Assembly (NCBI GenBank): GCA_950097015.1
Contig: CATNEN010000002.1
Coordinates: 1,488,001 to 1,552,000, forward strand
Source of the DNA: Macrostomum hystrix
Lineage: Eukaryota; Animalia; Platyhelminthes
Reading direction: 5' to 3'
Length of the DNA stretch: 64,000 nt
Shown here: in pieces, positions 43,163-64,000 of the stretch
Layout of the letters: the number at the start of each line of letters is the position of its first letter
Numbering within the stretch: position 1 is the stretch's first letter
The notes under the pieces: model-generated
What the model was told of the DNA's origin: nothing
What the model saw: the letters and a program-made list of their open reading frames with translations, nothing else
Database searches by the model: none
Program-made: the position numbers and the translations under genes

Positions 43163-43486
43163 CTACAAAGCGTCACTGCCAGGTGCAATTTCAACCGGCA
43201 TCGGCTCCTCGGCCTTCTGACGAACCCCGGCGCAGAAGTCGGACCAGGCCTGGTCTGTAAGATCGTGCGGGCACATGGCCATTGTGCAGCTGTCTAGCTG
43301 GCCGTCCTGGCTGCACTGGCAGGTGTTGCAGCCGTCGGGAGAGAACGAGAAGCCGCCGTGTCCCGACTGCTTGCAGTAGGCAGCCGGGTCAAAGCACGGC
43401 TCCTCGTGTACGCGACCGGCCACCAGCGTCAGGGCGAATGTCGCCAGGAGGAGAACGGCAAGCGATAGACTGCGTATTGGCAGCAT
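43163..43486 (-). CDS. Small secreted Cys-rich protein with a pacifastin-like (I19) inhibitor motif, 107 aa
   Basis: ATG at 43486 directly after a tacag acceptor. Hydrophobic signal peptide MLPIRSLSLAVLLLATFALTLVAG, followed by C...CNTCQCSQDGQLDSCTMAMC. Confidence 0.7.
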   Translation of the reverse strand: MLPIRSLSLAVLLLATFALTLVAGRVHEEPCFDPAAYCKQSGHGGFSFSPDGCNTCQCSQDGQLDSCTMAMCPHDLTDQAWSDFCAGVRQKAEEPMPVEIAPGSDAL

Positions 43487-43499
43487 CCTGTAATCGAGG

Positions 43500-44920
43500 A
43501 TTAGACCTAGATAGTTTATAGTCTTGAATGTTGATAGATCTAAAGCTAGAGATTGTGTAATGATTTCGATTGTTGATAGATCAAAACCTAGGGATTGTTT
43601 AATGATCAAGATTGTTGATAGATCAAAACCTACGGATTGTTTAATGATCAAGATTGTTGATAGATCTAAACCTAGAAATCGTTTAATGATCAAGATTGTT
43701 GATAGATCTAAACCTAGACATCGTTTAATGATCAAGATTGTTGATAGATCTAAACCTAGACATCGTTTAATGATCAAGATTGTTGATAGATCTAAACCTA
43801 GACATCGTTTAATGATCAAGATTGTTGATAGATCTAAACCTAGACATCGTTTAATGATCAAGATTGTTGATAGATCTAAACCTAGACATCGTTTAATGAT
43901 CAAGATTGTTGATAGATCTAAACCTAGGGATTGTGTAATGGTCTAGATTGATGAGGGATCAAAACCTAGGGATTGTGTAATGGTCTAGATTGATGAGAGA
44001 TCAAAACCTAGGGATTGTGTAATGGTCTAGATTGATGAGAGATCAAAACCTAAAGATTGTGTAATGGTCTAGATTGATGAGAGATCAAAACCTAGGGATT
44101 GTGTAATGGTCTAGATTGATGAGAGATCAAAACCTAGGGATTGTGTAATGGTCTAGATTGATGAGGGATCAAAACCTAGGGATTGTGTAATGGTCTAGAT
44201 TGATGAGAGATCAAAACCTAGGGATTGTGTAATGGTCTAGATTGATGAGAGATCAAAACCTAGGGATTGTGCAATGGTCTAGATTGATGAGAGATCAAAA
44301 CCTAGGGATTGTGTAATGGTCTAGATTGATGAGAGATCAAAACCTAGGGATTGTGTAATGGTCTAGATTGATGAGAGATCAAAACCTAGGGATTGTGTAA
44401 TGGTCTAGATTGATGAGAGATCAAAACCTAGGGATTGTGTAATGGTCTAGATTGATGAGAGATCAAAACCTAGGGATTGTGTAATGGTCTAGATTGATGA
44501 GAGATCAAAACCTAGGGATTGTGTAATGGTCTAGATTGATGAGAGATCAAAACCTAGGGATTGTGTAATGGTCTAGATTGATGAGAGATCAAAACCTAGG
44601 GATTGTGTAATGGTCTAGATTGATGAGACATCAAAACCTAGGGATTGTGTAATGGTCTAGATTGATGAGAGATCAAAACCTAGGGATTGTGTAATGGTCT
44701 AGATTGATGAGAGATCAAAACCTAGGGATTGTGTAATGGTCTAGATTGATGAGAGATCAAAACCTAGGGATTGTGTAATGGTCTAGATTGATGAGAGATC
44801 AAAACCTAGGGATTGTGTAATGGTCTAGATTGATGAGAGATCAAAACCTAGAGATTGTGTAATGATCTAGATTGATGAGAGATCAAAACCTAGGGATTGT
44901 GTAATGGTCTAGATTGTTGA
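43500..44920. repeat. 42-bp minisatellite with two variant domains
   Basis: The unit type switches near 43920 (ttgatagatctaaacctagacatcgtttaatgatcaagattg to gatcaaaacctagggattgtgtaatggtctagattgatgaga). Confidence 0.95.
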
Positions 44921-45574: not shown

Positions 45575-45705
45575 TACCAGCTGGATGAACTGAAGCAACG
45601 CAGAGTTAAGTGTCTTGCCAAAGGACACAGATTGTTCCAGTGGAGTCGGGAATCGAACCCGCGACCATTAATTAACTGAGTCCGACGCCTAACCACTAGG
45701 CTGAA
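45575..45705 (-). mobile_element. Partial SINE family A copy
   Basis: Matches 25680-25808 (cagagttaagtgtct..aaaggacaca..cagtggagtcgggaatcgaaccc..gagtccgacgcc..aaccactaggct). Confidence 0.75.
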
Positions 45706-45714
45706 ACCCATTAT

Positions 45715-46060
45715 AGTAGATTCTAGCATCTCTCCTTGCTGCGATTCTAGCAGCTTTCCTTGCTGCGATTCTAGCAGCTTTCCTTGCTGCGATTCTAGCA
45801 GCTTTCCTTGCTGCGATTCTAGCAGCTTTCCTTGCTGCGATTCTAACAGTTTTCTTTGCTGCGATTCTAGCATCTCTCCTTGCTACGATTCTGGCAGCTT
45901 GCCTTGCTGCGATTATAGCATCTCTCCTTGCTGCGATTCTAGCATCTCTCCTTGCTGCGATTCTAGCATCTCTCCTTGCTGCGATTCTAGCAGTTTTCCT
46001 TGCGGCGATTCTAGCATCTCTCCTTGCTGCGATTCTGGCAGCTTGCCTTGCTGCGGTTCT
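45715..46060. repeat. 24-bp minisatellite (gcgattctagcagctttccttgct)
   Basis: About 14 copies. Confidence 0.9.
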
Positions 46061-46099
46061 GTGGATATACGGAAATTTCATCCTTTCATTTTAGCAGAT

Positions 46100-48315
46100 T
46101 GTAATAACTAAGGCCGAGGCTATTTTTAGTGAGCAGACAAAACTCTCAATCTTTACTGCCACGCTGAGCGCGCGTCCATATATTATTTGCTAGAACTGGG
46201 GTGGCGACACCCACCCCGCTCCGCTACCAATCAAACGACCCAGGTGTACACCTGGGCCTGGCTCACGTGCGTACGCACACTACATCTCTCCCCCTTCGAA
46301 CAGAAACTGTGGGGAGACAAAAAAGAACGAATTCGAGAAGCAAGATGTCGAAAAGAACGAAAAAGAACTCGACCGAAAAAAATATGCAGCTATTGGAGGA
46401 AATAAAACACTCGCATTGATAGTCGCATCGGACTTGCAAAGAAAAGCGTGCTTGTGATTGTTAATCTCAGTAGAAAAGTCAGTTCGTTTTCAGTCCTTGG
46501 TTTAGTCCTTGTAGATCTTCACGCCACCCCGTGCAGCGCGGGGGTGCGGGCGCAGCGCCACCGGGGATTCGGCCGGGTTCCGCGCCGCCTCGCCTGGAGT
46601 TTCTGGCGCGGCAGCCTGCGGCCTGGCACCAGCGTCGTCTGATTCTGGGGTGACGACCTTGACCGCCGTGCAATGCCGCCAGCAGGCCGCGCCGTCACGA
46701 CGCAGCATCAGCGAGTTGCCGGCCACCCGCTGGACTGTCCAGGCGCCGCTCTCGAATGGCGTTTGCGTCTTGCTGGCACCGACTCGCCGTCGCAGCACCG
46801 AATCGCCGACCTGGATTTCGTGCCGCCGTGGCCGCCTCCTGGCGTCCGCTCGCTGCTTCATCGCGGCCTTGGCGCTCGCATCCATCTCTCGCAGCCGCTG
46901 CTCGTTGATGCGGACGCGCTGGGATGGCCGGGCGGCGGGGATGACATCATTTGGTCGCCGGCCCATCAGCAGCTCGGCTGGCGCGCGGCCCGTGGCTGTG
47001 TGCGGCGTGTTCCTGTAGGCCAGCAGCCACTCGTCCAGAGCAGCCCTCCAGTCGCGCCGCTCCTCGATTGCCGCCCGCACGACCTTGTTGATTGAGCGGT
47101 TCAGCCGCTCTGTCATGCCGTTGGCGGCTGGGTAGTAAGGCGTGATGAGGCGGTGCTTGATGCCGTAGCTTTCTAGGAAACGGCCAAACTCCTTGGATGA
47201 AAATGGCGGCCCGTTGTCAGTAACGAGCTCCTGCGGGATGCCAAATCGCGCGAACATTTCTCGCAGGCGCGGGACCAGTGCCTCGGCCGTCGTTGTCTGC
47301 ATGAGCTGCACCTCTGGGAATCTCGAGTATCTGTCCACGCACACCAGCAGCATGTTGTTGTTGATCGGGCCTACAAAGTCAGCCCCAATCGACAACCAGG
47401 CGCCCTTAGGGATAGGCGTCGGCTGTAGAGGCGTAGCCCGGACGGCTGGCGTGTGAGACGTGATGGCACAGCTGCGGCACCGACTGACGAACTCCTCCGC
47501 TTGTGTTGCCATTCTCGGCCACCAGACCTTGCTGCTGAGCCTTGCGGTCGTCTTCTGCGAGCACTGGTGTCCTTGGTGCGCCAGCTCGAGCATCTGCTGC
47601 CGTAGAGCTGCTGGCACGACAATCCGCTGATGCCGAAGAAGAACTCCGTCTACCGCCGACAGCTCCTCTCGCAGCGCGTGGAGTGACCGCATCTCAGCGC
47701 TAGAGCGGTCCCATTGGCCGCCTTGCATCGCTGCTATCGCTGCCCGGATAACTGGGTCGCTGGCTGAGCTCTTGCGGATGTCTTCGAGCGTGAGCGCCTT
47801 CGGGACAGCCGCCTGCGCTACCTCGTTTATGTAGGCCTCTCTCAGCTGCTCGCTGGTCCTACGTCCTTCAGCGCTTAGAGGCTGCCTGCTGAGTATGTCT
47901 GCAGCATTGGATGCTCCTGGCTGGTATTCGACCTTGAATACCAGGTGCTGGATACGCAGCGCCATACGCTCGACTCGTGGAGGCGGCCGTGACCCTGGCG
48001 CATACATGGCTGTCAGCGGCTTGTGGTCGGAGATCACCGTGAATTCGGGCGATCCATACAAGTAGTACTCAAACTTCAGGCAGCCGAACTTCACGGCGAG
48101 CGCCTCTTTTTCGGTCTGCGAATATCGCCGCTCTACGTCGGAGAGGGTCCGGCTCGCGTATGCGACTGGCCGCGAACTGCCGTCGTGCTGTACTTGCGCC
48201 AGGATTGCGCCGAGTCCGGTTGGTCCCGCGTCCACAATCAGCTGTGTCCGTAGCCGCTTGTCCAGGCTGTCCAGGTGTACACCTGGGCCTGGCTCACGTG
48301 CGTACGCACACTACA
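46100..48315 (-). mobile_element. Ty3/Gypsy LTR retrotransposon with a large internal deletion
   Basis: 5-bp TSD CAGAT at 46095-46099 and 48316-48320. The 3' LTR is 46100-46284 (TG...CA), with PPT ggggagaga at 46285-46293. Only the first 45 bp of the 5' LTR remain (48271-48315, identical to 46240-46284). Confidence 0.92.
46502..48235 (-). CDS. Pol fragment: RNase H plus integrase (Gypsy)
   Basis: DAGPTGLGAIL...RPVAYASRTL..ERRYSQTEKEALA (RNase H), H-x3-H...C-xx-C zinc finger, GADFVGP, LVTDNGPPF, PYYPAANGMTER; no internal stops. Confidence 0.9.
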   Translation of the reverse strand: MDAGPTGLGAILAQVQHDGSSRPVAYASRTLSDVERRYSQTEKEALAVKFGCLKFEYYLYGSPEFTVISDHKPLTAMYAPGSRPPPRVERMALRIQHLVFKVEYQPGASNAADILSRQPLSAEGRRTSEQLREAYINEVAQAAVPKALTLEDIRKSSASDPVIRAAIAAMQGGQWDRSSAEMRSLHALREELSAVDGVLLRHQRIVVPAALRQQMLELAHQGHQCSQKTTARLSSKVWWPRMATQAEEFVSRCRSCAITSHTPAVRATPLQPTPIPKGAWLSIGADFVGPINNNMLLVCVDRYSRFPEVQLMQTTTAEALVPRLREMFARFGIPQELVTDNGPPFSSKEFGRFLESYGIKHRLITPYYPAANGMTERLNRSINKVVRAAIEERRDWRAALDEWLLAYRNTPHTATGRAPAELLMGRRPNDVIPAARPSQRVRINEQRLREMDASAKAAMKQRADARRRPRRHEIQVGDSVLRRRVGASKTQTPFESGAWTVQRVAGNSLMLRRDGAACWRHCTAVKVVTPESDDAGARPQAAAPETPGEAARNPAESPVALRPHPRAARGGVKIYKD

Positions 48316-48539: not shown

Positions 48540-48785
48540 GTGGCTCCCGCTGCGATTCCAGGTATACAATCGTTCGTGCTGCGATTCCAGCGTTGCTATG
48601 GTTCCTGCTGCGATTCCAGCTACACTATGGCTCCCGCTGCGATTCCAGGTATACAATCGTTCGTGCTGCGATTCCAGCGTTGCTATGGTTCCTGCTGCGA
48701 TTCCAGCTACACTATGGCTCCCGCTGCGATTCCAGGTATACAATCGTTCGTGCTGCGATTACAGCTACACTATGGTTCCTGCTGC
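48540..48785. repeat. 87-bp higher-order repeat x3 built from gctgcgattccag subunits
   Basis: tggctcccgc recurs at 48541, 48628 and 48715. Confidence 0.9.
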
Positions 48786-49014
48786 AAATCTTATCTATTC
48801 CATAGGTATTATAAATAGTCATAAATTTTATAATTTTTATTCTGGTTTAGAACTTATTTGAAGTAAATGAGACTTGATTCTAAGACTATCGAATGGAAAA
48901 AAAGACAATTACAGATAAACAAAGGGAGCATTGGTAGAGACTATTTTCAAAGCAAGAAATTTGTAAAGCCAGCAAACAAATTCAGTGATTATTCATAACT
49001 CATGGTTTAATGGG

Positions 49015-51232
49015 TCACATTAAAGGAGGACCACCTCCTCGAATGCCATCGTGACTGCCGCCAATAAGTTCTTTTACCGCGGCAGCAGCAGCAGCAGCCT
49101 CCGCGTTGGTGGCAGACGTGGGCAGTCCGCCGCCGATACCACCGAGTACTCCGTTGCTAAGCAACGCAGCAACAGCCGAAACGCCGCCAAAGCTGAAAGT
49201 GTCCCAAGGCCGCGGCCCGACCTCCACAAGGCGAGCATTCGAGCCGAATTTCTCTGCTACGACATCTTCTAAGTCGCCAAAGCCGTCGATAAGGCCCAGC
49301 TGCTTGGCTTTGTCAGCCAGCCAGATGTCGCCTTCGAATAGGTCGGACTCTGGCGCGCCTTTGAGTCTGTCGCCGCGTGCCGACTTCACTACCTTCAAAA
49401 ACGGGACACACAGAAGGGATCAATGTGGTTCAGAGGGATAAATGGATACTGAGGCGGTGCCTTTGATCTAGGTACGGAGTCGGTGCTTTAAATCTTAGGT
49501 GTCTAGGTGGTGCCTTTGATCTTAGGTGCCTAGGCGGTGCCTTTGATCTTAGGTGCCTAGGCGGTGCCTTTGATCTTAGGTGCAAAGGCGGTGCCTTTGA
49601 TCTAGGTACGGAGTCGGTGCCTTTGATCTTAGGTGCCTAGGCGGTGCCCTTGATCCTAAGTGCCTAGGCGGTGCCTTTGATCTTAGGTGCAAAGGCGGTG
49701 CCTTTGATCTTAGGTACCTAGGCGGTGCCTTTGATCTTAGGTGCAAAGGCGGTGCCTTTGATCTTAAGTGCCTAGGCGGTGCCTTTGATCCTAGCCCTTT
49801 GGCGCTGCCTTTGATCTAAAGTGCCTAGGCGGTGCCGTTGATCTTAGGTGCCTAGGTGCTGCCGTTGATCTTAGGTGCCTAGGCGCTGCCATCGATCTTA
49901 TTGTACCTATGCGGTGCCTTCGATCCTGGGCCTTTATCTTAGGAGCCTGTGCTTACGATCCTAGGTGTACCCGTTGGCACGTAAACACCGAGGCAGGCGC
50001 AAGAAACTCACATCGATGAAGCCGGCGTGAATGCCGTCCAGCATGTAGCGAGTGAACTTTGCGGAGTCCGGGGTAATGGGCTCCAAGTTGGTGCCGATGG
50101 CTTTGCGTTTTCCGGCCCGGTTGACTGTCAGTGCCAGACTGGCGCGCTCTTTCAGCGCCGTTTGCAGGTCCAAGTGGACACCGAGAGCGCCGATTGAGCC
50201 GATGAGGCTGTGCCTGTTGGCATAGATTTCATTGGCGCTGCAGGCCAGGTAGTAACCACCGGAGGCCGCTAGATCTTCAACAAAAGCCAGCACGGGAATA
50301 TTGCCGCGCTTGGCTGATAGGCGCAGAATCTCATTGCGAATCAGGTCGCATTGCACCTGCAAGAGATTGAGGCAGCTGAATTGGACTGAGGCATGTGGGG
50401 ATGCCTTTGACCTGTGTACAATGGCGGTGTCTTTTAAATTGCGTGCCGATGCGGTGCCTCTGATGATGGTAGGGAGGCGGTGCCTCTAGCTGATGATGGT
50501 AGGAAGGCGGTGCCTTTGATGATGGTAGGGAGGCGGTGCCTTTGATGACGGTAGGGAGGCGGTGCCTTTGATGATGGTAGGGAGGCGGTGCCTTTGATGA
50601 TGGTAAGGAGGCAGTGCCTCTGATGATGGTAGGGAGGCGGTGCCTCTGATGATGGTAGGGAGGTGGTGCCTTTGATGATGGTAGGAAGGCGGTGCCTTTT
50701 TAAGTTCGTTGGAAAGCGGTGCCGTTAAATTTGGTAGAGAGGCTGTGCCTTAAACTGGGTACGGAGGTGGTATCTATAAACTGCAGGTACAGAGGCGGTC
50801 CTTTTGAACTGGCTAAGGAGGCGGCATCTCTTAAACTGTCATGAGAGACTGTGCGGCCAGGCGTGTTTTTTGACAATGCCCCCCTTTTCAGGCCACTTGT
50901 GGTCGGTGGACATCGTACTTATTATTGTATTGTATTGTAAAGAGGCGGTATTTTTAACTGGATACGGAGGCGGCGCCTTTGATCTTGGCACTCAGATATG
51001 AGCACAACTACAGCGCGACAGTGCTCACAGGCCAGCCGCCGGGGCTGTTGATCCGCAGAGCCAGTGCCGCCATTCGGCGCTGCTTGAAGGCCCTCTCAAG
51101 CAGCGGCTTCACGCTGTGAAAATTGATCACCCCCGGCTGGTAGCGACGGCCACTAGGGGGAGAAATTTGGCCGAACAGCTTAATGACTGGCACGACTGGG
51201 GCCTGCGATAGTCTGTCACGAAGGCGCTGCAT
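49015..51232 (-). CDS. S49-family (SppA/ClpP-like) serine peptidase of bacterial type, 3 exons, 308 aa
   Basis: Exons 51232-51029, 50356-50012 and 49392-49015, all phase 0 and GT-AG. Motifs: PVVPVIKLFGQI, LRINSPGG, VLAFVEDLAASGGYYLACSANEIYAN..SLIGSIG, AGKRK, DLFEGDIW...A..LGLIDGFG. Confidence 0.88.
49450..49930. repeat. Minisatellite with ggcggtgcctttgat core (S49 intron 2)
   Basis: ~27-bp imperfect units. Confidence 0.9.
50440..50700. repeat. 26-bp minisatellite with ggcggtgcctttgat core (S49 intron 1)
   Basis: ggcggtgcctttgatgatggtaggga copies, decaying further to about 51000. Confidence 0.88.
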
Positions 51233-51373
51233 TTGTTTTGCGGTCTGTGATGTCTCTTATCTGTTATCATCCAGCAAGTTCATCAGCTGCAATGATGGCG
51301 CACAAATCTCTACTCATATTTATCCCATCTCCCAATTTTGGTTAACAGCTTTAGACTTATTATCGAGAGGTCA

Positions 51374-51628
51374 GGGGTGAGTGGCAGAGCTGTTAACGCG
51401 TTTGCCTCTCGGACCAATATCCCTGAGCTCGATTCCGCGGCGAGGCCACATTTATTTGGGGCGCAGCCACGGACAGAATGCTGGGGCTTGTCGTGCAACT
51501 TACACCCTTGAGGGCACAACGGCTCCAACCTCCAAGGCACAGTGAGACTGTACACTGCCTGGCGATGACAAAGTCAGGGCAAATGTACACACCTGTCTGC
51601 AGCCCTCCTGCAATTATTATTGTTATTT
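51374..51628 (+). mobile_element. tRNA-derived SINE family B
   Basis: A-box-like tggcagagctgttaacgcg, B-box-like agctcgattcc, (att)n tail; second partial copy at 7040-7135. Confidence 0.65.
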
Positions 51629-52154
51629 ATCTAGATGTCGGGAGTTCGAACCCCATACTATGGTAATCAATTTGAGTACTTGAGCAGAACACATAACTCC
51701 CAGGTGTTTCAGTTCGCAAATCTGTTTAGTCATGCACCAGAATTAACTAAGATAGATATTTGTATCGGTGTTACGGCATCCCCCCAGATGTCCACGGACT
51801 GAACATGTGTACAATTTTGCTTGACATCACTTCTACCAATTTAAACGTCAAAGCAATTAAAACGAATATCTTTAGATGTTTATCGATTGTGGAAAACATC
51901 AGTAACTCATACAGTTAATTAATTCTAAGCTAAATTTATTAGGTACTAGAACAACTCATACAATCAATTTATAGTGCTCGCAAATATACAAAGAAAATGT
52001 TTACAGCTCAAAGTTAAGCCATTTTACAACAATCAAGACGAAAGACAAAAACATTATAATGTCGAAGCGTGTGAACAAGCACTAATAAACAAATTAATAT
52101 ATTTGAAATTGCACAAAACGTATTCAGAACTTAAAAGAAACTAGAACAGTTTAT

Positions 52155-52765
52155 ATCCGACCTGAAGGATCTGGGATCATGGCTGTCACACCTGAAGGAT
52201 CTGGGATCATGACTGTCACACCTGAAGGATCTGGGATCATGGCTGTCACACCTGAAGGATCTGGGATCATGGCTGTCACACCTGAAGGATCTGGGATCAT
52301 GGCTGTCACACCTGAAGGATCTGGGATCATGGCTGTCACACCTGAAGGATCTGGGATCATGGCTGTCACACCTGAAGGATCTGGGATCATGGCTGTTACA
52401 CCTGAAGGATCTGGGATCATGGCTGCCATATTTGAAGGACCTGGGATCATGGCTGCCACACCTGAAGGATCTGGGAACATGGCTGCCACGCCTGAAGGAT
52501 CTGGGATTATGACTGTCACACCTGAAGGATCTGGGATCAGGACTGTCACACCTGAAGGATCTGGGAACATGGCTGCCACGCCTGAAGGATCTGGGATTAT
52601 GACTGTCACACCTGAAGGATCTGGGATCAGGACTGTCACACCTGAAGGATCTGGGGTTATGACTGTCACACCTGAAGGATCTGGGATTATGATTGTTACA
52701 CCTGAATGATCTGGGATCATGGCTGCCACACCTGAAGGATCTGGGATCATGGCTGTTACACCCGA
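52155..52765. repeat. 30-bp minisatellite (cacctgaaggatctgggatcatggctgtca)
   Basis: About 20 copies immediately 3' of the BORCS6 stop codon. Confidence 0.95.
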
Positions 52766-55096: not shown

Positions 55097-57693
55097 AAGT
55101 GGTTCTCAACCTGTGGGTTGCGACCCCCACTGGGGTCCCATGACCATTTTTCTGGGGGTTGCAGCAATAAGAAAAATATGAAAAAATGTATTTTTTATTG
55201 GGGAAGAACCCTTGAGATATTAGAGTAAAAAATATATAGTAAAAGTAAAATTAAGTCAAAGGCTGTTAGCTACATTGCAATGGCTATAGCACTAGCAGCC
55301 TAGCACTCAACTTAAAGTTGCAACACAAAATATGCATGCAGTCTCAAGCTAAGCCTCTTCTGCTAGATATGGACTGAGTCACACGACACCACACGACAAG
55401 CAAAACAAACTTTCCTTCTCTGTCTCCCTTCTGCCTTACCCCAGCAAGTTTAACACAAACAATTGCAACTCCTTACCTAGAGGAGGAACTCTTCTCACCA
55501 ACCCACCCCCACATTCAAACGCATTCTCATTCCTTTTGGCTTAGCTGATTGGAGGCACAAGGAAGATTAGGGAAATGATAGATGGAACAAAACATCTGAG
55601 TCATAGCCAAGTCTAGAGAAGGCAAACTGGGATTCTCATATATGATATATGTCTCTGCTGGGAGAAATATGAGCATACAAGTGTAAAACTGATAAAGTGA
55701 ATACAGAATAACTACAGAGAGGCATCTGCTTAGATATTCAATCTCATCTATTGTTAATGGCAATGTCTGCAAACTCACGTAAGCGCAGTTATAATGAAGC
55801 ATTTCTTGAGTTAGGTTTCACAACTACAAATGAAAAACCACCATGTGTTATCTGCGAAGTCACATTGTCAAAGGAGTCAATGAAACCAAACAAACTCAAG
55901 CGCCATCTGCAAACGCAGTACCCTGAAGTTGCGACTACGCCACGTGACTACTTTATGGAGAAGCTGAAGGCGTTGGACAGGAAGAAAGGCTGCCGTGAGA
56001 GCTTCATATGTTGCTGCTCTTCACATTGCCAGGAAGATGAAGCAAGCCCCACAAATTGGTGAAGAGCTTCTGCTTCCCATGATGAAAGTCATTGGCATCA
56101 TGTGCCATAAAGTTAGAATCGCTATCCATGTCCAATGACACTGTGAGACATTGTATCCACGACATGTCCAATGACATCCTATCTCAAATCATGAAGGTAA
56201 GATAATCACCATTCTTTGCCATTCAATTGGACAAATCAACAGACATCACTAACCAAGCACAGTTGCTGGTGTATGTTTGCTACCTTCATGGAAAAGGCTT
56301 TGAGGAAAACTTTCTGTGTTGCAAATCTTTGCCCTGTCACATTCATGGAGAAGACATCTTCAATGTCATCAACAAATTCATGCAGTCAAATTCTACCAGC
56401 ACTATATGGCAGTGTGCACAGATGGAGCAGCAGCATGCACAGGAAAGAACAGTGGTGCTGTGAAATGCATCCAAGATGTCACGCCTGACACTAGCTAGAC
56501 ACATTGCTTCATCCATCATGAAGTACTGGCAGCCAAAGACTTGTCAGCTGACCTCCACGCCGTGGTGACAGACATTGTTTCCGTGGTGAATTTCATCAAA
56601 AGCCGACCTCTGAATCATCAACTGTTAACAGCGCTATGCAAGGAAATGGGGACTGAGCACAGTTCCCTCCTTCTCCACACCAAAGTTTGCTGGCTATCAC
56701 GTGGTCATGTGCTCAACAGCAATTTTGAACTGAGAGAAGAAGTTGGTCATTTCTTGCACAACAAAGACCACAAAAAATCACTGAACTTTAAGGACCGCTG
56801 CTGGCTAGCCAAATTGGCTTATCTGTGCAACATTTTTGGCAGGCTGAACAGATTGAATCTATCACTTCAAGGAGCAGAGAAGACCATTGACCATTGTCAA
56901 CAGCAGATCTGCAATCACTGCCTTTCAGAAAAAGATAGAGCTAGTCTTTGACAGCTTCACCAAAGACAAAGAGGATCTGCACAGAGATTTGGCAACAACC
57001 ATCGTATCACACCTTGAAAATCTCAAGCAACAATTGACACATTATTTCAGTGAAGCTAGGAGCAAGTACTCGAGTCAATATCCATGGATGGTGTCTCCCT
57101 TCACAACTTCTCCCAATGACACTGTCTCGCTGCCATTTGCTATTGCAGAGCACCTGCTTGATTTGTTTTCCGACATCAGCTTCAAGGTGCTGTTTCCCAC
57201 CATTGCTCTGGTGGAGTTTTTGTGCAGCTTGCTTGCCGCTGCCAATGCTGTGAGGCACTTGCTCCCCTTTGTGTCTATCTGGTCATGTGAGACAGGCTTC
57301 AGTGCTCTCATGGCGCTGAAATACAAAGCCAGGAATCGTCTAAATGCCAAGAGTGATCTGCGTTTGGCACTGACAAAGAAAGATTTTCCTCAAATCAACT
57401 TGTTGTGTGGCAAAATGCAATTCCAACCCTCTCACTGAAAAGTGCATTTGTGACACTGATCTTAAAACTGAAAAAATTTACTGGTTTTTGTTGTTTGTTT
57501 GTTTGTTGCTTATTTGTATTCTTGTTCATAGTTTTTCTTGTTTTATTTTAATTCTAAATATATGCATACATTGTGTGAGTACATTATACTTGATGTTGCA
57601 TGATATTGATTACCTATTACAAAAGGGTCACACAGAAAAAAATAGATGCAAGTGAATAAATTAGGGTTGCCTGAAAAATGTTGAGAACTGCTT
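55097..57693 (+). mobile_element. Degenerate hAT transposon, Buster group
   Basis: TIRs aagtggttctcaac and gttgagaactgctt, with 8-bp TSD ACTTAGAC (55089-55096, 57694-57701, NNNTANNN type). The frameshifted transposase (55770-57438) includes CVICEVTLSKESMKPNKLKRHL, QLDKSTD, CTDGAAA, VNFIKSRPLN, WLSRGHVL and CETGFSAL...K.K.RNRL. Confidence 0.92.
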
Positions 57694-63278: not shown

Positions 63279-63469
63279 CTTCAGCGGATGGGATATTGTG
63301 GCTTTGAGACACGTGCTAGAAAAAACAACACACATACTAAAACCAGGGCATCGACTTAGGCGAGAAATTTTTCATAGCCTTTTTTGAACCCATTTGCTCC
63401 AGTCAATAGATTGGAAATTTCCCCATCATCGATGAGATTCTGCTTTTTTATCTAATCCATGGGATATGC

Positions 63470-64000
63470 ATATTCTCCTTAATAGCTGAGATTACGATAT
63501 TCTCCCGTAATAGTTGAGATTGGGATAGTCTCCCATAATAGCTGAGATTGGGATATTCTCCCATAATAGCTGAGATTGGGATATTCTCCCGTAATAGCTG
63601 AGATTGGGATATTCTCCCATAATAGCTGAGATTGGGATTCTCCCATAATAGCTGGGATTGGGATATTCTCCCATAATAGCTGAGATTGGGATTCTCCCAT
63701 AATAGCTGAGATTGGGATATTCTCCCATAATAGCTGAGATTGGGATTCTCCCATAATAGCTGAGATTGGGATATTCTCCCATAATAGCTGAGATTGGGAT
63801 TCTCCCATAATAGCTGAGATTGGGATATTCTCCCATAATAGCTGAGATTGGGATATTCTCCCGTAATAGCTGAGATTGGGATATTCTCCCATAATAGGTG
63901 AGATTGGGATATTCTCCAATAATAGCTGAGATTGGGATATTCTCCCATAATAGCTGAGATTGGGATATTCTCCCGTAATAGCTGAGATTGGGATATTCTC
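63470..64000. repeat. 28/25-bp minisatellite (aatagctgagattgggatattctcccat) in complexin intron
   Basis: Tandem copies run to the window end. Confidence 0.95.

What the first reader, a model, noticed from the sequence alone, without database searches (positions are those of the whole stretch)
49015..51232. Bacterial-type S49 peptidase carrying spliceosomal introns: candidate domesticated horizontal transfer
Seen: a 308-aa single-domain S49 with two phase-0 GT-AG introns. The catalytic Ser (AASGGY) and a candidate Lys (AGKRK) are retained, and SPGGS is changed to SPGGW. Established: SppA/S49 peptidases are typical of bacteria, archaea and plastids and are not a standard animal family. Inference: as I recall them, the short alphaproteobacterial S49 proteins are the closest pattern (V.V..L.G.I; LERAF; ALxINSPGGxPVQxxLI; LF.G..W). 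The introns argue against contamination.
Basis: partly seen in the sequence, partly recalled or inferred. Interest (0 to 1): 0.72.

Follow-up and report, generated by a model that had tools for sequence, protein, structure and literature searches.

The report
Spliced bacterial-type S49 peptidase in flatworm
A Macrostomum flatworm carries, splices and expresses a gene for a small soluble serine peptidase of a kind otherwise found almost only in bacteria and a few protists; it was probably picked up from a microbe long ago, but the data here cannot name the donor or exclude very old inheritance.

Summary
A three-exon, minus-strand gene (51232-51029, 50356-50012, 49392-49015) encodes 68+115+125 = 308 aa. 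It has two phase-0 GT..AG introns. A 1177-nt transcript contig from a public run matches the window exactly and skips exactly these introns.

Exon 2 matches Pfam Peptidase_S49 (E 1.7e-19). The nucleophile Ser, helper Ser and general-base Lys are kept. SPGGW is real, and W at that site occurs only in Macrostomum among 468 relatives.

Macrostomum lignano has orthologues (71-84% identity per exon), so the gene is older than that split. Every other relative found is at most 47% identical. These are short soluble S49 proteins of Pseudonocardiaceae and Alphaproteobacteria, plus a few eukaryotes (Aplanochytrium, Micractinium, plankton transcripts). No other animal appeared among named hits.

Trees put Macrostomum on a very long branch, in no stable place. 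AU tests reject neither a bacterial (p 0.39) nor a protist (p 0.49) sister group.

Contamination is excluded. An old horizontal transfer is the best reading (about 0.55). Ancient eukaryotic inheritance with many losses stays open (about 0.3). This is a new member of a known kind, of moderate interest.

The exons were never joined. Full-length work used the M. lignano proteins.

The parts
51233..51287 (-). 5' UTR as far as the transcript contig matches the genome. It holds an in-frame TAA 9 codons before the ATG. A TTGCAG acceptor-like site lies at 51292-51287, and 23 further contig letters do not match the genome.
51029..51232 (-). Exon 1 coding part, 68 aa, ATG at 51232. It ends INSPGGWP; the Trp codon is at 51034..51032.
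50357..51028 (-). Intron 1, 672 nt, phase 0, GTGAGC...TTGCAG. It holds a 26-bp minisatellite at 50451-50699.
50012..50356 (-). Exon 2, 115 aa, the catalytic core. The nucleophile Ser (AASGGY) is at 50263..50261, the helper Ser (GSIG) at 50197..50195 and the general-base Lys (second K of AGKRK) at 50104..50102.
49393..50011 (-). Intron 2, 619 nt, phase 0, GTGAGT...TTGAAG. It holds a 27-bp minisatellite (49452-49927) with the same GGCGGTGCCTTTGAT core as intron 1.
49015..49392 (-). Exon 3 coding part, 125 aa plus stop. It carries the conserved VVKSARGDRL...LFEGDIW...LGLIDG block, then a Gly/Ala-rich tail ending GIRGGGPPLM.
48843..49014 (-). 3' UTR covered by the transcript contig (GC 0.31). An AATAAA lies just beyond it at 48841..48836.

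Best explanation
This is a real, transcribed and correctly spliced nuclear gene of a Macrostomum flatworm. It encodes a 308-aa soluble member of peptidase family S49 (clan SK, ClpP-like fold). By inference it works as other S49 enzymes do: subunits assemble into a ring, and a Ser nucleophile (AASGGY) is activated by a Lys (AGKRK), helped by a second Ser (GSIG), to cut peptides inside the ring. It has no membrane anchor, no signal peptide and no N-terminal extension over the bacterial proteins, so it most likely acts in the cytosol. The short Arg-rich N-terminal helix leaves mitochondria possible. Its ancestry is the short S49 subfamily that is abundant in Alphaproteobacteria and Pseudonocardiaceae. 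The most likely history is one old horizontal transfer, from a bacterium or a microbial eukaryote, into the Macrostomum lineage before the split of this species from M. lignano. After that came gain of two introns, adaptation to host base composition and fast divergence: the SPGGS-to-SPGGW change, loss of the ERR and DPF motifs and of the C-terminal ...RFGL end, and a new Gly/Ala-rich tail ending RGGPPL. Gene structure, expression, family, fold and kept catalytic residues are shown. Oligomer state, activity, location and the transfer itself are inferred.
For: The spliced 1177-nt contig has 0 mismatches and shows both junctions in run X2, and both joints recur in X9. The unspliced genomic form is in X1. 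Pfam S49 matches at E 1.7e-19, and the SppA_dom hits across the exons are colinear. Ser32, Ser54 and Lys85 of exon 2 align with B. subtilis SppA chain positions 92, 114 and 144 (S147, S169, K199 by my recollection of the numbering and of the K199A construct) and with the RVGTYK lysine of E. coli SppA. They fall in invariant or nearly invariant columns of 39 relatives. A model of the M. lignano orthologue (pLDDT 84) matches 3RST/4KWB at TM 0.75-0.81. The neighbourhood is eukaryotic: eL6, an AIG1-type GTPase, Tc1 and Ty3/gypsy fragments. M. lignano orthologues P0164 and P0001 are 71/83/84% identical per exon, and the tail end is conserved. Only one cluster among 1.84e9 representatives scores below 1e-30, and it is Macrostomum; the next hit is 2e-17 at 44%. 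The top 120 hits of a clean word search are Pseudonocardiaceae and unnamed metagenome proteins at 43-47%, with no other animal. The protein starts at the same residue as the bacterial ones. Neither Macrostomum intron position is shared with the 7-intron Micractinium gene, and the homologue on L001 is one uninterrupted ORF. GC3 of 0.57-0.71 is like the host genes in the window (0.63-0.74).
Against: No tree nests Macrostomum inside a bacterial clade. It is basal next to protist rows in two trees and sits in a long-branch cluster in a third. AU tests allow both a Pseudonocardiaceae sister (p 0.39) and a protist sister (p 0.49). Eukaryotic members of the same subfamily exist. Mitochondrial SppA homologues are reported in Andalucia and Acanthamoeba (PMC7050145), so old vertical descent is possible. 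The Trp beside the oxyanion-hole glycines and the lost conserved motifs could mean altered or lost activity. No dN/dS could be computed because no M. lignano DNA was available.
Confidence: 0.55

Rival explanations
1. This is an ancient eukaryotic gene. A short S49 peptidase came in with the mitochondrial (alphaproteobacterial) ancestor, was kept in scattered eukaryotes and in the Macrostomum line, and was lost in most other animals.
For: Eukaryotic members of the same subfamily exist: Aplanochytrium P0013, Micractinium P0109, the poly-A transcript P0283 and the Tara metatranscript P0005. In outgroup-rooted trees the named eukaryotes and Macrostomum both lie outside the crown of labelled bacteria (SH-aLRT 84-91). 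Macrostomum plus protists as one clade costs only 0.11 lnL (p 0.49). PMC7050145 reports mitochondrial SppA homologues in protists. PMC5567314 counts S49 among families kept in animals. An earlier follow-up in this genome (s1-300525) found another 'bacterial-type' hydrolase to be an old animal gene.
Against: No other animal appears among named hits, although the library holds UniRef and NCBI proteomes. There is no N-terminal targeting extension. No intron position is shared with the algal gene. The basal position may be long-branch attraction to the outgroup: a fast-evolving bacterial row (P0056, alphaproteobacterial synteny) joins the same long-branch cluster. This history needs very many independent losses.
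Confidence: 0.3
2. The gene is expressed but no longer makes a working peptidase. On this reading it is a decaying or neofunctionalised transferred gene whose product binds peptides or partners rather than cleaving them.
For: Trp replaces the small residue (Ser or Ala in 96% of 468 relatives) next to SPGG. The ERR and DPF motifs and the C-terminal RFGL end are lost, and the stem branch is very long. The region before the Lys is modelled with low confidence.
Against: All 11 invariant columns, including Ser, helper Ser and the GG, and the nearly invariant Lys are kept in two species. The frame is open over 308 codons. The new features (SPGGWP, tail ending RGGPPL) are themselves conserved between species at 71-84% identity. 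The low-confidence loop is the part that packs against the neighbouring subunit in SppA rings.
Confidence: 0.12
3. It is bacterial contamination or an assembly artefact.
For: The nearest named relatives are bacterial.
Against: There are two spliceosomal introns removed in transcripts. The same contig carries eL6, a GTPase and retrotransposon genes. No bacterial or metagenomic protein exceeds 47% identity. Orthologues are annotated in M. lignano.
Confidence: 0.01

Closest known systems
Short soluble 'S49 family peptidase' of Alphaproteobacteria and Pseudonocardiaceae (e.g. Amycolatopsis, Allokutzneria, Sulfitobacter, Parvibaculum; 265-300 aa, often auto-named SohB or SppA)
   Same: It has the same length, the same start point and a single S49 domain with no membrane anchor. 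It keeps INSPGG, EDxAASGGY, GSIG, the catalytic Lys, VxxxRGxRL and LFxGxxW...LGLIDG. Identity is 43-47% over 91-100% of the core.
   Different: It has Trp after SPGG. ERR and DPF are replaced. The C-terminal ExRAxWxRFGL is replaced by a Gly/Ala-rich tail ending RGGPPL. It has two introns and eukaryotic expression. The bacterial genes sit in a polyprenyl synthase - methyltransferase - S49 - glyQ - glyS neighbourhood. None of these bacterial proteins has a tested function, to my knowledge.
Bacillus subtilis SppA (PDB 3RST, 4KWB) and E. coli SppA / protease IV (3BF0)
   Same: The fold matches (TM 0.75-0.81 for the M. lignano orthologue model). The Ser / helper Ser / Lys residues align.
   Different: Those enzymes are membrane-anchored signal-peptide peptidases. 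Identity is only 21-26%. E. coli SppA is a tandem of two S49 domains. The flatworm protein has no anchor, so signal-peptide clearance in a membrane is unlikely.
Peptidase S49 listed as a horizontal-transfer candidate in Anthozoa (A. digitifera_15871; PMC4878875)
   Same: It is an S49 peptidase in an animal genome, attributed there to an algal or bacterial source.
   Different: No sequence was available here, so it is unknown whether it belongs to the same subfamily or is an independent event.
Eukaryotic S49 / SppA homologues: chloroplast SppA of plants, and mitochondrial SppA of Acanthamoeba and Andalucia (PMC7050145)
   Same: They are nuclear-encoded S49 peptidases of bacterial ancestry.
   Different: Those are organelle-targeted, and the plant one is the long tandem form (from my own knowledge). 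The flatworm protein has no presequence extension.

Membership tests
Peptidase family S49 (Pfam PF01343, MEROPS clan SK) | Significant match to the family profile above the curated cut-off | tested here: met
   Exon 2 alone scores 70.7 bits against a cut-off of 24.9, E 1.7e-19. Exons 1 and 3 hit the flanking model positions colinearly.
Peptidase family S49 (Pfam PF01343, MEROPS clan SK) | Ser nucleophile, Lys general base and helper Ser at the family positions | tested here: met
   S32, S54 and K85 of exon 2 align with 3RST chain positions 92, 114 and 144 and with the E. coli RVGTYK lysine. The columns are invariant or at least 90% conserved in 39 relatives. The assignment of chain position 144 to K199 rests on my memory that 3RST is the K199A mutant.
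Peptidase family S49 (Pfam PF01343, MEROPS clan SK) | ClpP/crotonase-like alpha/beta fold | tested here: met
   The model of M. lignano orthologue P0164:1-245 (pLDDT 84, pTM 0.81) has 4KWB and 3RST as best PDB matches (E 2e-17, TM 0.75-0.81), followed by E. coli SppA and then ClpP. This was done on the orthologue because the window's exons were not joined.
Peptidase family S49 (Pfam PF01343, MEROPS clan SK) | Ring oligomer with active sites between subunits; measurable peptidase activity | not testable with these tools
   This needs recombinant protein.
Signal peptide peptidase SppA proper (TIGR00706 / TIGR00705 equivalogs) | Membrane anchor and an equivalog-level score | tested here: not met
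   There is no hydrophobic N-terminal segment, and the protein starts where the soluble bacterial proteins start. The best TIGR00706 score is 62.9 bits against a cut-off of 155 on exon 2 alone. The score part is inconclusive because exons were scanned apart.
Horizontally acquired gene in an animal | Integrated in the host genome with host gene features, and expressed | tested here: met
   Introns, spliced transcript contigs, host-like GC3 and eukaryotic neighbours.
Horizontally acquired gene in an animal | Absent from related animals | tested here: inconclusive
   Only Macrostomum appears among named animal hits. Most hits are unnamed, and no taxon filter was available.
Horizontally acquired gene in an animal | Nested within a donor clade in a supported phylogeny | tested here: not met
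   The branch is long and its position unstable. AU p is 0.39 for an actinobacterial sister and 0.49 for a protist sister.

The most novel reading that the evidence does not exclude
A microbial S49 peptidase was captured by the Macrostomum lineage. It then gained both of its introns from one and the same minisatellite-bearing element (an introner-like event), while the active-site neighbourhood was remodelled (SPGGW, new RGGPPL tail) for a new, animal-specific substrate. Both introns hold the same GGCGGTGCCTTTGAT-core repeat in the same orientation. That repeat occurs nowhere else in the 64 kb, and neither intron position is shared with the algal homologue.
Probability: 0.12. Interest if true: 0.7.

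Novelty: new member of a known kind. Interest (0 to 1): 0.4.

Why it matters
Well-documented, expressed genes of bacterial type are still few in flatworms, and Macrostomum is a transgenic and RNAi model in which such a gene could be tested directly. The short soluble S49 subfamily is very common in Alphaproteobacteria and has no known function to my knowledge, so an animal copy with a clear phenotype could give the first functional handle on it. If the transfer is confirmed, the gene also offers a small dated case of intron gain and active-site remodelling after transfer. If it proves to be an old eukaryotic gene, it adds to the evidence for a mitochondrial S49 peptidase in early eukaryotes. 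Either way the M. lignano orthologues are already in UniProt as uncharacterised S49-domain proteins, so the gene itself is not new.

Tried and rejected
- **Contamination:** rejected by spliced contigs and neighbours.
- **Recent transfer with an identifiable donor:** rejected. Nothing above 47% identity turned up in 1.84e9 representatives, 5.8e9 clusters or a scan of 185,579 bacterial and archaeal genomes.
- **First word search with P0001:** poor. Only 302 of 8000 candidates were true hits, probably because of low-complexity tail words. It was repeated on the core of P0164.
- **Naming likely eukaryotic relatives:** cluster look-ups, contig look-ups and accession searches in papers gave only Aplanochytrium and Micractinium. 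P0153, P0007 and P0056 turned out bacterial by gene context.
- **Long-branch clade with Macrostomum:** it is not a clean eukaryote clade, since P0056 in it is bacterial.
- **Shared introns with a eukaryotic homologue:** none.
- **tRNA and Rfam scans around the gene:** nothing.
- **Literature searches for S49 in flatworms:** nothing.
- **The careful tree search:** it did not finish in the time limit, so quick trees were used.
- **Not done by rule:** joining the three exons into one protein for search, tree or fold. Exon 2 alone and the M. lignano proteins stood in.

Full report
**What is there**

On the minus strand, three open stretches give 68, 115 and 125 codons (51232..51029, 50356..50012, 49392..49018, stop at 49017..49015). 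Intron 1 (51028..50357, 672 nt) reads GTGAGC...TTGCAG. Intron 2 (50011..49393, 619 nt) reads GTGAGT...TTGAAG. Both lie between codons.

Each exon was searched by reference. Two Macrostomum lignano proteins returned by the searches served as full-length stand-ins.

**Is the gene real?**

Laying public runs on 48850-51500 gave, in run X2, one 1177-nt contig lying on 48850-49390, 50010-50353 and 51026-51287 without a single difference. It skips 619 and 672 nt with CT..AC ends on the plus strand, which is GT..AG on the gene's strand, at exactly the predicted junctions.

- Run X9, filed under another organism label, shows both joints too.
- Run X1 holds the unspliced genomic form.
- Seven runs hold about 0.40 of the sampled words, which is the share the exons and UTRs make up.

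The 5' UTR runs at least to 51287 and holds an in-frame TAA nine codons before the ATG, so the protein has no longer N-terminus. Twenty-three more letters of the contig do not match the genome, and they begin at a TTGCAG site. A spliced leader is possible but could not be read.

The surroundings are eukaryotic: ribosomal protein eL6, an AIG1-type GTPase, a Tc1-type transposase, and a Ty3/gypsy RNase H-integrase fragment just downstream. Contamination is therefore excluded.

**Family and active site**

- **Profile matches.** Exon 2 matches Pfam Peptidase_S49 at 70.7 bits (cut-off 24.9). The three exons hit the SppA domain model colinearly.
- **Catalytic residues.** Against solved structures, the Ser of AASGGY, the Ser of GSIG and the second Lys of AGKRK align with B. 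subtilis SppA chain positions 92, 114 and 144. The Lys also aligns with the RVGTYK lysine of E. coli SppA. By my recollection these are S147, S169 and K199 (3RST being the K199A mutant) and K209.
- **Conservation.** In an alignment of 39 relatives, the two Ser, the GG and seven other columns are invariant, and the Lys is at least 90% conserved. Macrostomum keeps them all.
- **Fold.** A model of the M. lignano orthologue core (pLDDT 84) finds 4KWB and 3RST first (TM 0.75-0.81), then E. coli SppA, then ClpP.
- **SPGGW.** SPGGW is real and unusual. Among 468 relatives with the motif, the next residue is Ser (323) or Ala (126), and Trp occurs only in Macrostomum.
- **Other changes.** Macrostomum has also replaced the ERR and DPF motifs. 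It lacks the C-terminal ...RFGL end, which 322 of about 475 relatives carry. Instead it has a Gly/Ala-rich tail whose end (G-I/F-R-G-G-P-P-L) is conserved between the window and M. lignano.

**Relatives**

An exhaustive HMMER search with exon 2 against 1.84e9 representatives found one hit below 1e-30. That hit is M. lignano A0A1I8JA66 (P0001, 80% identity). The next hit is at 2e-17 and 44%.

A second M. lignano protein (P0164) is 71, 83 and 84% identical to exons 1, 2 and 3. So the window comes from another Macrostomum species or a well-diverged copy, and the gene predates that split.

A word search with the core of P0164 gave 6133 significant hits. After the two Macrostomum proteins, the best 120 are a flat plateau (1e-53 to 8e-49, 43-47% identity) of Amycolatopsis, Allokutzneria, Prauserella and unnamed metagenome proteins. 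No other animal is named.

Alphaproteobacteria (Sulfitobacter, Bradyrhizobium, Defluviicoccus and others) follow at 37-42%. A scan of one genome for each of 185,579 bacterial and archaeal species found nothing above 46%.

The same short-S49 subfamily has eukaryotic members:

- Aplanochytrium (P0013, MMETSP);
- the green alga Micractinium (P0109);
- a polyadenylated transcript (P0283, locus L006);
- a Tara Oceans metatranscript (P0005).

**Phylogeny**

Macrostomum sits on a stem of about 1.1-2.0 substitutions per site.

- With membrane-type SppA as outgroup, it branches at the base of the short-S49 family, beside the protist rows. It lies outside a crown holding all labelled bacteria (SH-aLRT 84-91).
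- With more long-branch rows added, it moves into a cluster of fast-evolving sequences. At least one of these, P0056, is bacterial by gene context.
- AU tests reject neither Macrostomum plus protists (lnL difference 0.11, p 0.49) nor Macrostomum plus the Pseudonocardiaceae clade (3.4, p 0.39).

The origin is therefore unresolved by these data, and long-branch effects are likely.

**Other bearings on origin**

- The protein starts at the same residue as the bacterial proteins and has no presequence.
- The Micractinium gene has seven introns. Five were placed exactly: after residues 42, 130 and 245, and inside codons 77 and 117. Two were placed only roughly, near residues 176 and 213.
- The Macrostomum positions correspond to residues 80/81 and 193/194 of the algal protein. 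None is shared. The homologue on L001 is an uninterrupted ORF.
- GC3 of the three exons (0.57-0.71) is like that of host genes in the window (0.63, 0.74). No donor composition is left.
- Literature: PMC4878875 lists a peptidase S49 as a transfer candidate in Anthozoa. PMC5567314 counts S49 among families kept in animals, SAR and fungi. PMC7050145 reports mitochondrial SppA homologues in Andalucia and Acanthamoeba. I found nothing on S49 in flatworms.

**Reading**

The best-supported account is an old transfer of a short soluble S49 peptidase gene into the Macrostomum lineage, followed by intron gain, host-like composition and rapid divergence. I put this at about 0.55. It rests mainly on three things: the lack of any other animal among named hits, the bacterial-type N-terminus, and the lineage-specific introns.

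Ancient eukaryotic (mitochondrial) ancestry with many losses stays at about 0.3. Protist and algal members exist, and the trees cannot separate the two. A companion case in this genome (s1-300525) turned out to be inherited, which is a caution.

**Mechanism**

By inference from the family, the protein is a ring-forming Ser/Lys peptidase acting on peptides in a soluble compartment. The Trp next to the oxyanion-hole glycines and the new conserved tail suggest changed specificity or regulation. In B. subtilis SppA the C-terminus binds in the active sites (title of 4KWB).

**Side observation**

Both introns are largely made of related 26-27-bp minisatellites with the core GGCGGTGCCTTTGAT, in the same orientation. 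There are 24 matches, against 0.1 expected by chance. None lies outside the two introns in the 64 kb. This may point to a common origin of the two introns. It was not testable further here.

**Verdict**

This is a new member of a known kind: a bacterial-type gene domesticated in an animal, in a family already flagged as a transfer candidate in corals. Interest is moderate.

Noticed in passing
window 49452-49927 and 50451-50699 (also 50969-50983): Both introns of the gene are filled with related 26-27-bp minisatellites sharing the core GGCGGTGCCTTTGAT in the same orientation. There are 24 matches against 0.1 expected, and none lies elsewhere in the window. The two introns may share an origin.
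   Followed up: partly
window 51374-51498: An extremely high-copy element lies about 90 bp upstream of the transcript's mapped 5' end. Summed contig depth reaches 1.7 million in run X1 and thousands in X2, with many variant copies and loose ends. ARAGORN and Rfam find nothing. It is probably a SINE-like or other dispersed repeat.
   Followed up: partly
window 51287-51292 and the 5' end of the X2 contig: The transcript contig carries 23 letters beyond 51287 that do not match the genome, starting at a TTGCAG acceptor-like site. This may be a trans-spliced leader, which is known in Macrostomum from my own knowledge. The letters were not shown.
   Followed up: no
window 46502-48235 (-): A Ty3/gypsy-type pol fragment (RNase H, integrase zinc finger, rve core; GC 0.64) lies directly downstream of the S49 gene.
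   Followed up: partly
window 48541-48785: An 87-bp (29-bp sub-unit) tandem repeat lies just past the gene's 3' end. Further coding-looking tandem repeats are at 43163-43903, 45689-46081, 52151-52750 and 63448-63948.
   Followed up: no
window 55751-57438 (+): These ORFs look like a BED-finger/hAT transposase remnant (CVICEVTLSKESMKPNKLKRHLQ..., a dimerisation-like C-terminus). Not scanned against Pfam.
   Followed up: no
L002 3803-10103 and L093 5422-11996: Two distinct bacterial contigs share the order polyprenyl synthase - SAM methyltransferase - short S49 peptidase - glyQ - glyS, with ppdK following directly in L093 and a TonB-dependent receptor gene intervening before it in L002. This conserved neighbourhood could hint at the unknown bacterial function.
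   Followed up: no
proteins P0001 and P0164 (M. lignano, UniProt): Each annotated M. lignano model seems partly wrong. P0001 lacks about 27 residues at the end of the exon-2 equivalent but has the conserved tail. P0164 has the full core but a tail that does not align, which suggests a frameshift or a different splice. The break in P0001 rejoins exactly at VVKSS, the first residues of exon 3 here. This suggests that the second intron position is shared.
   Followed up: partly
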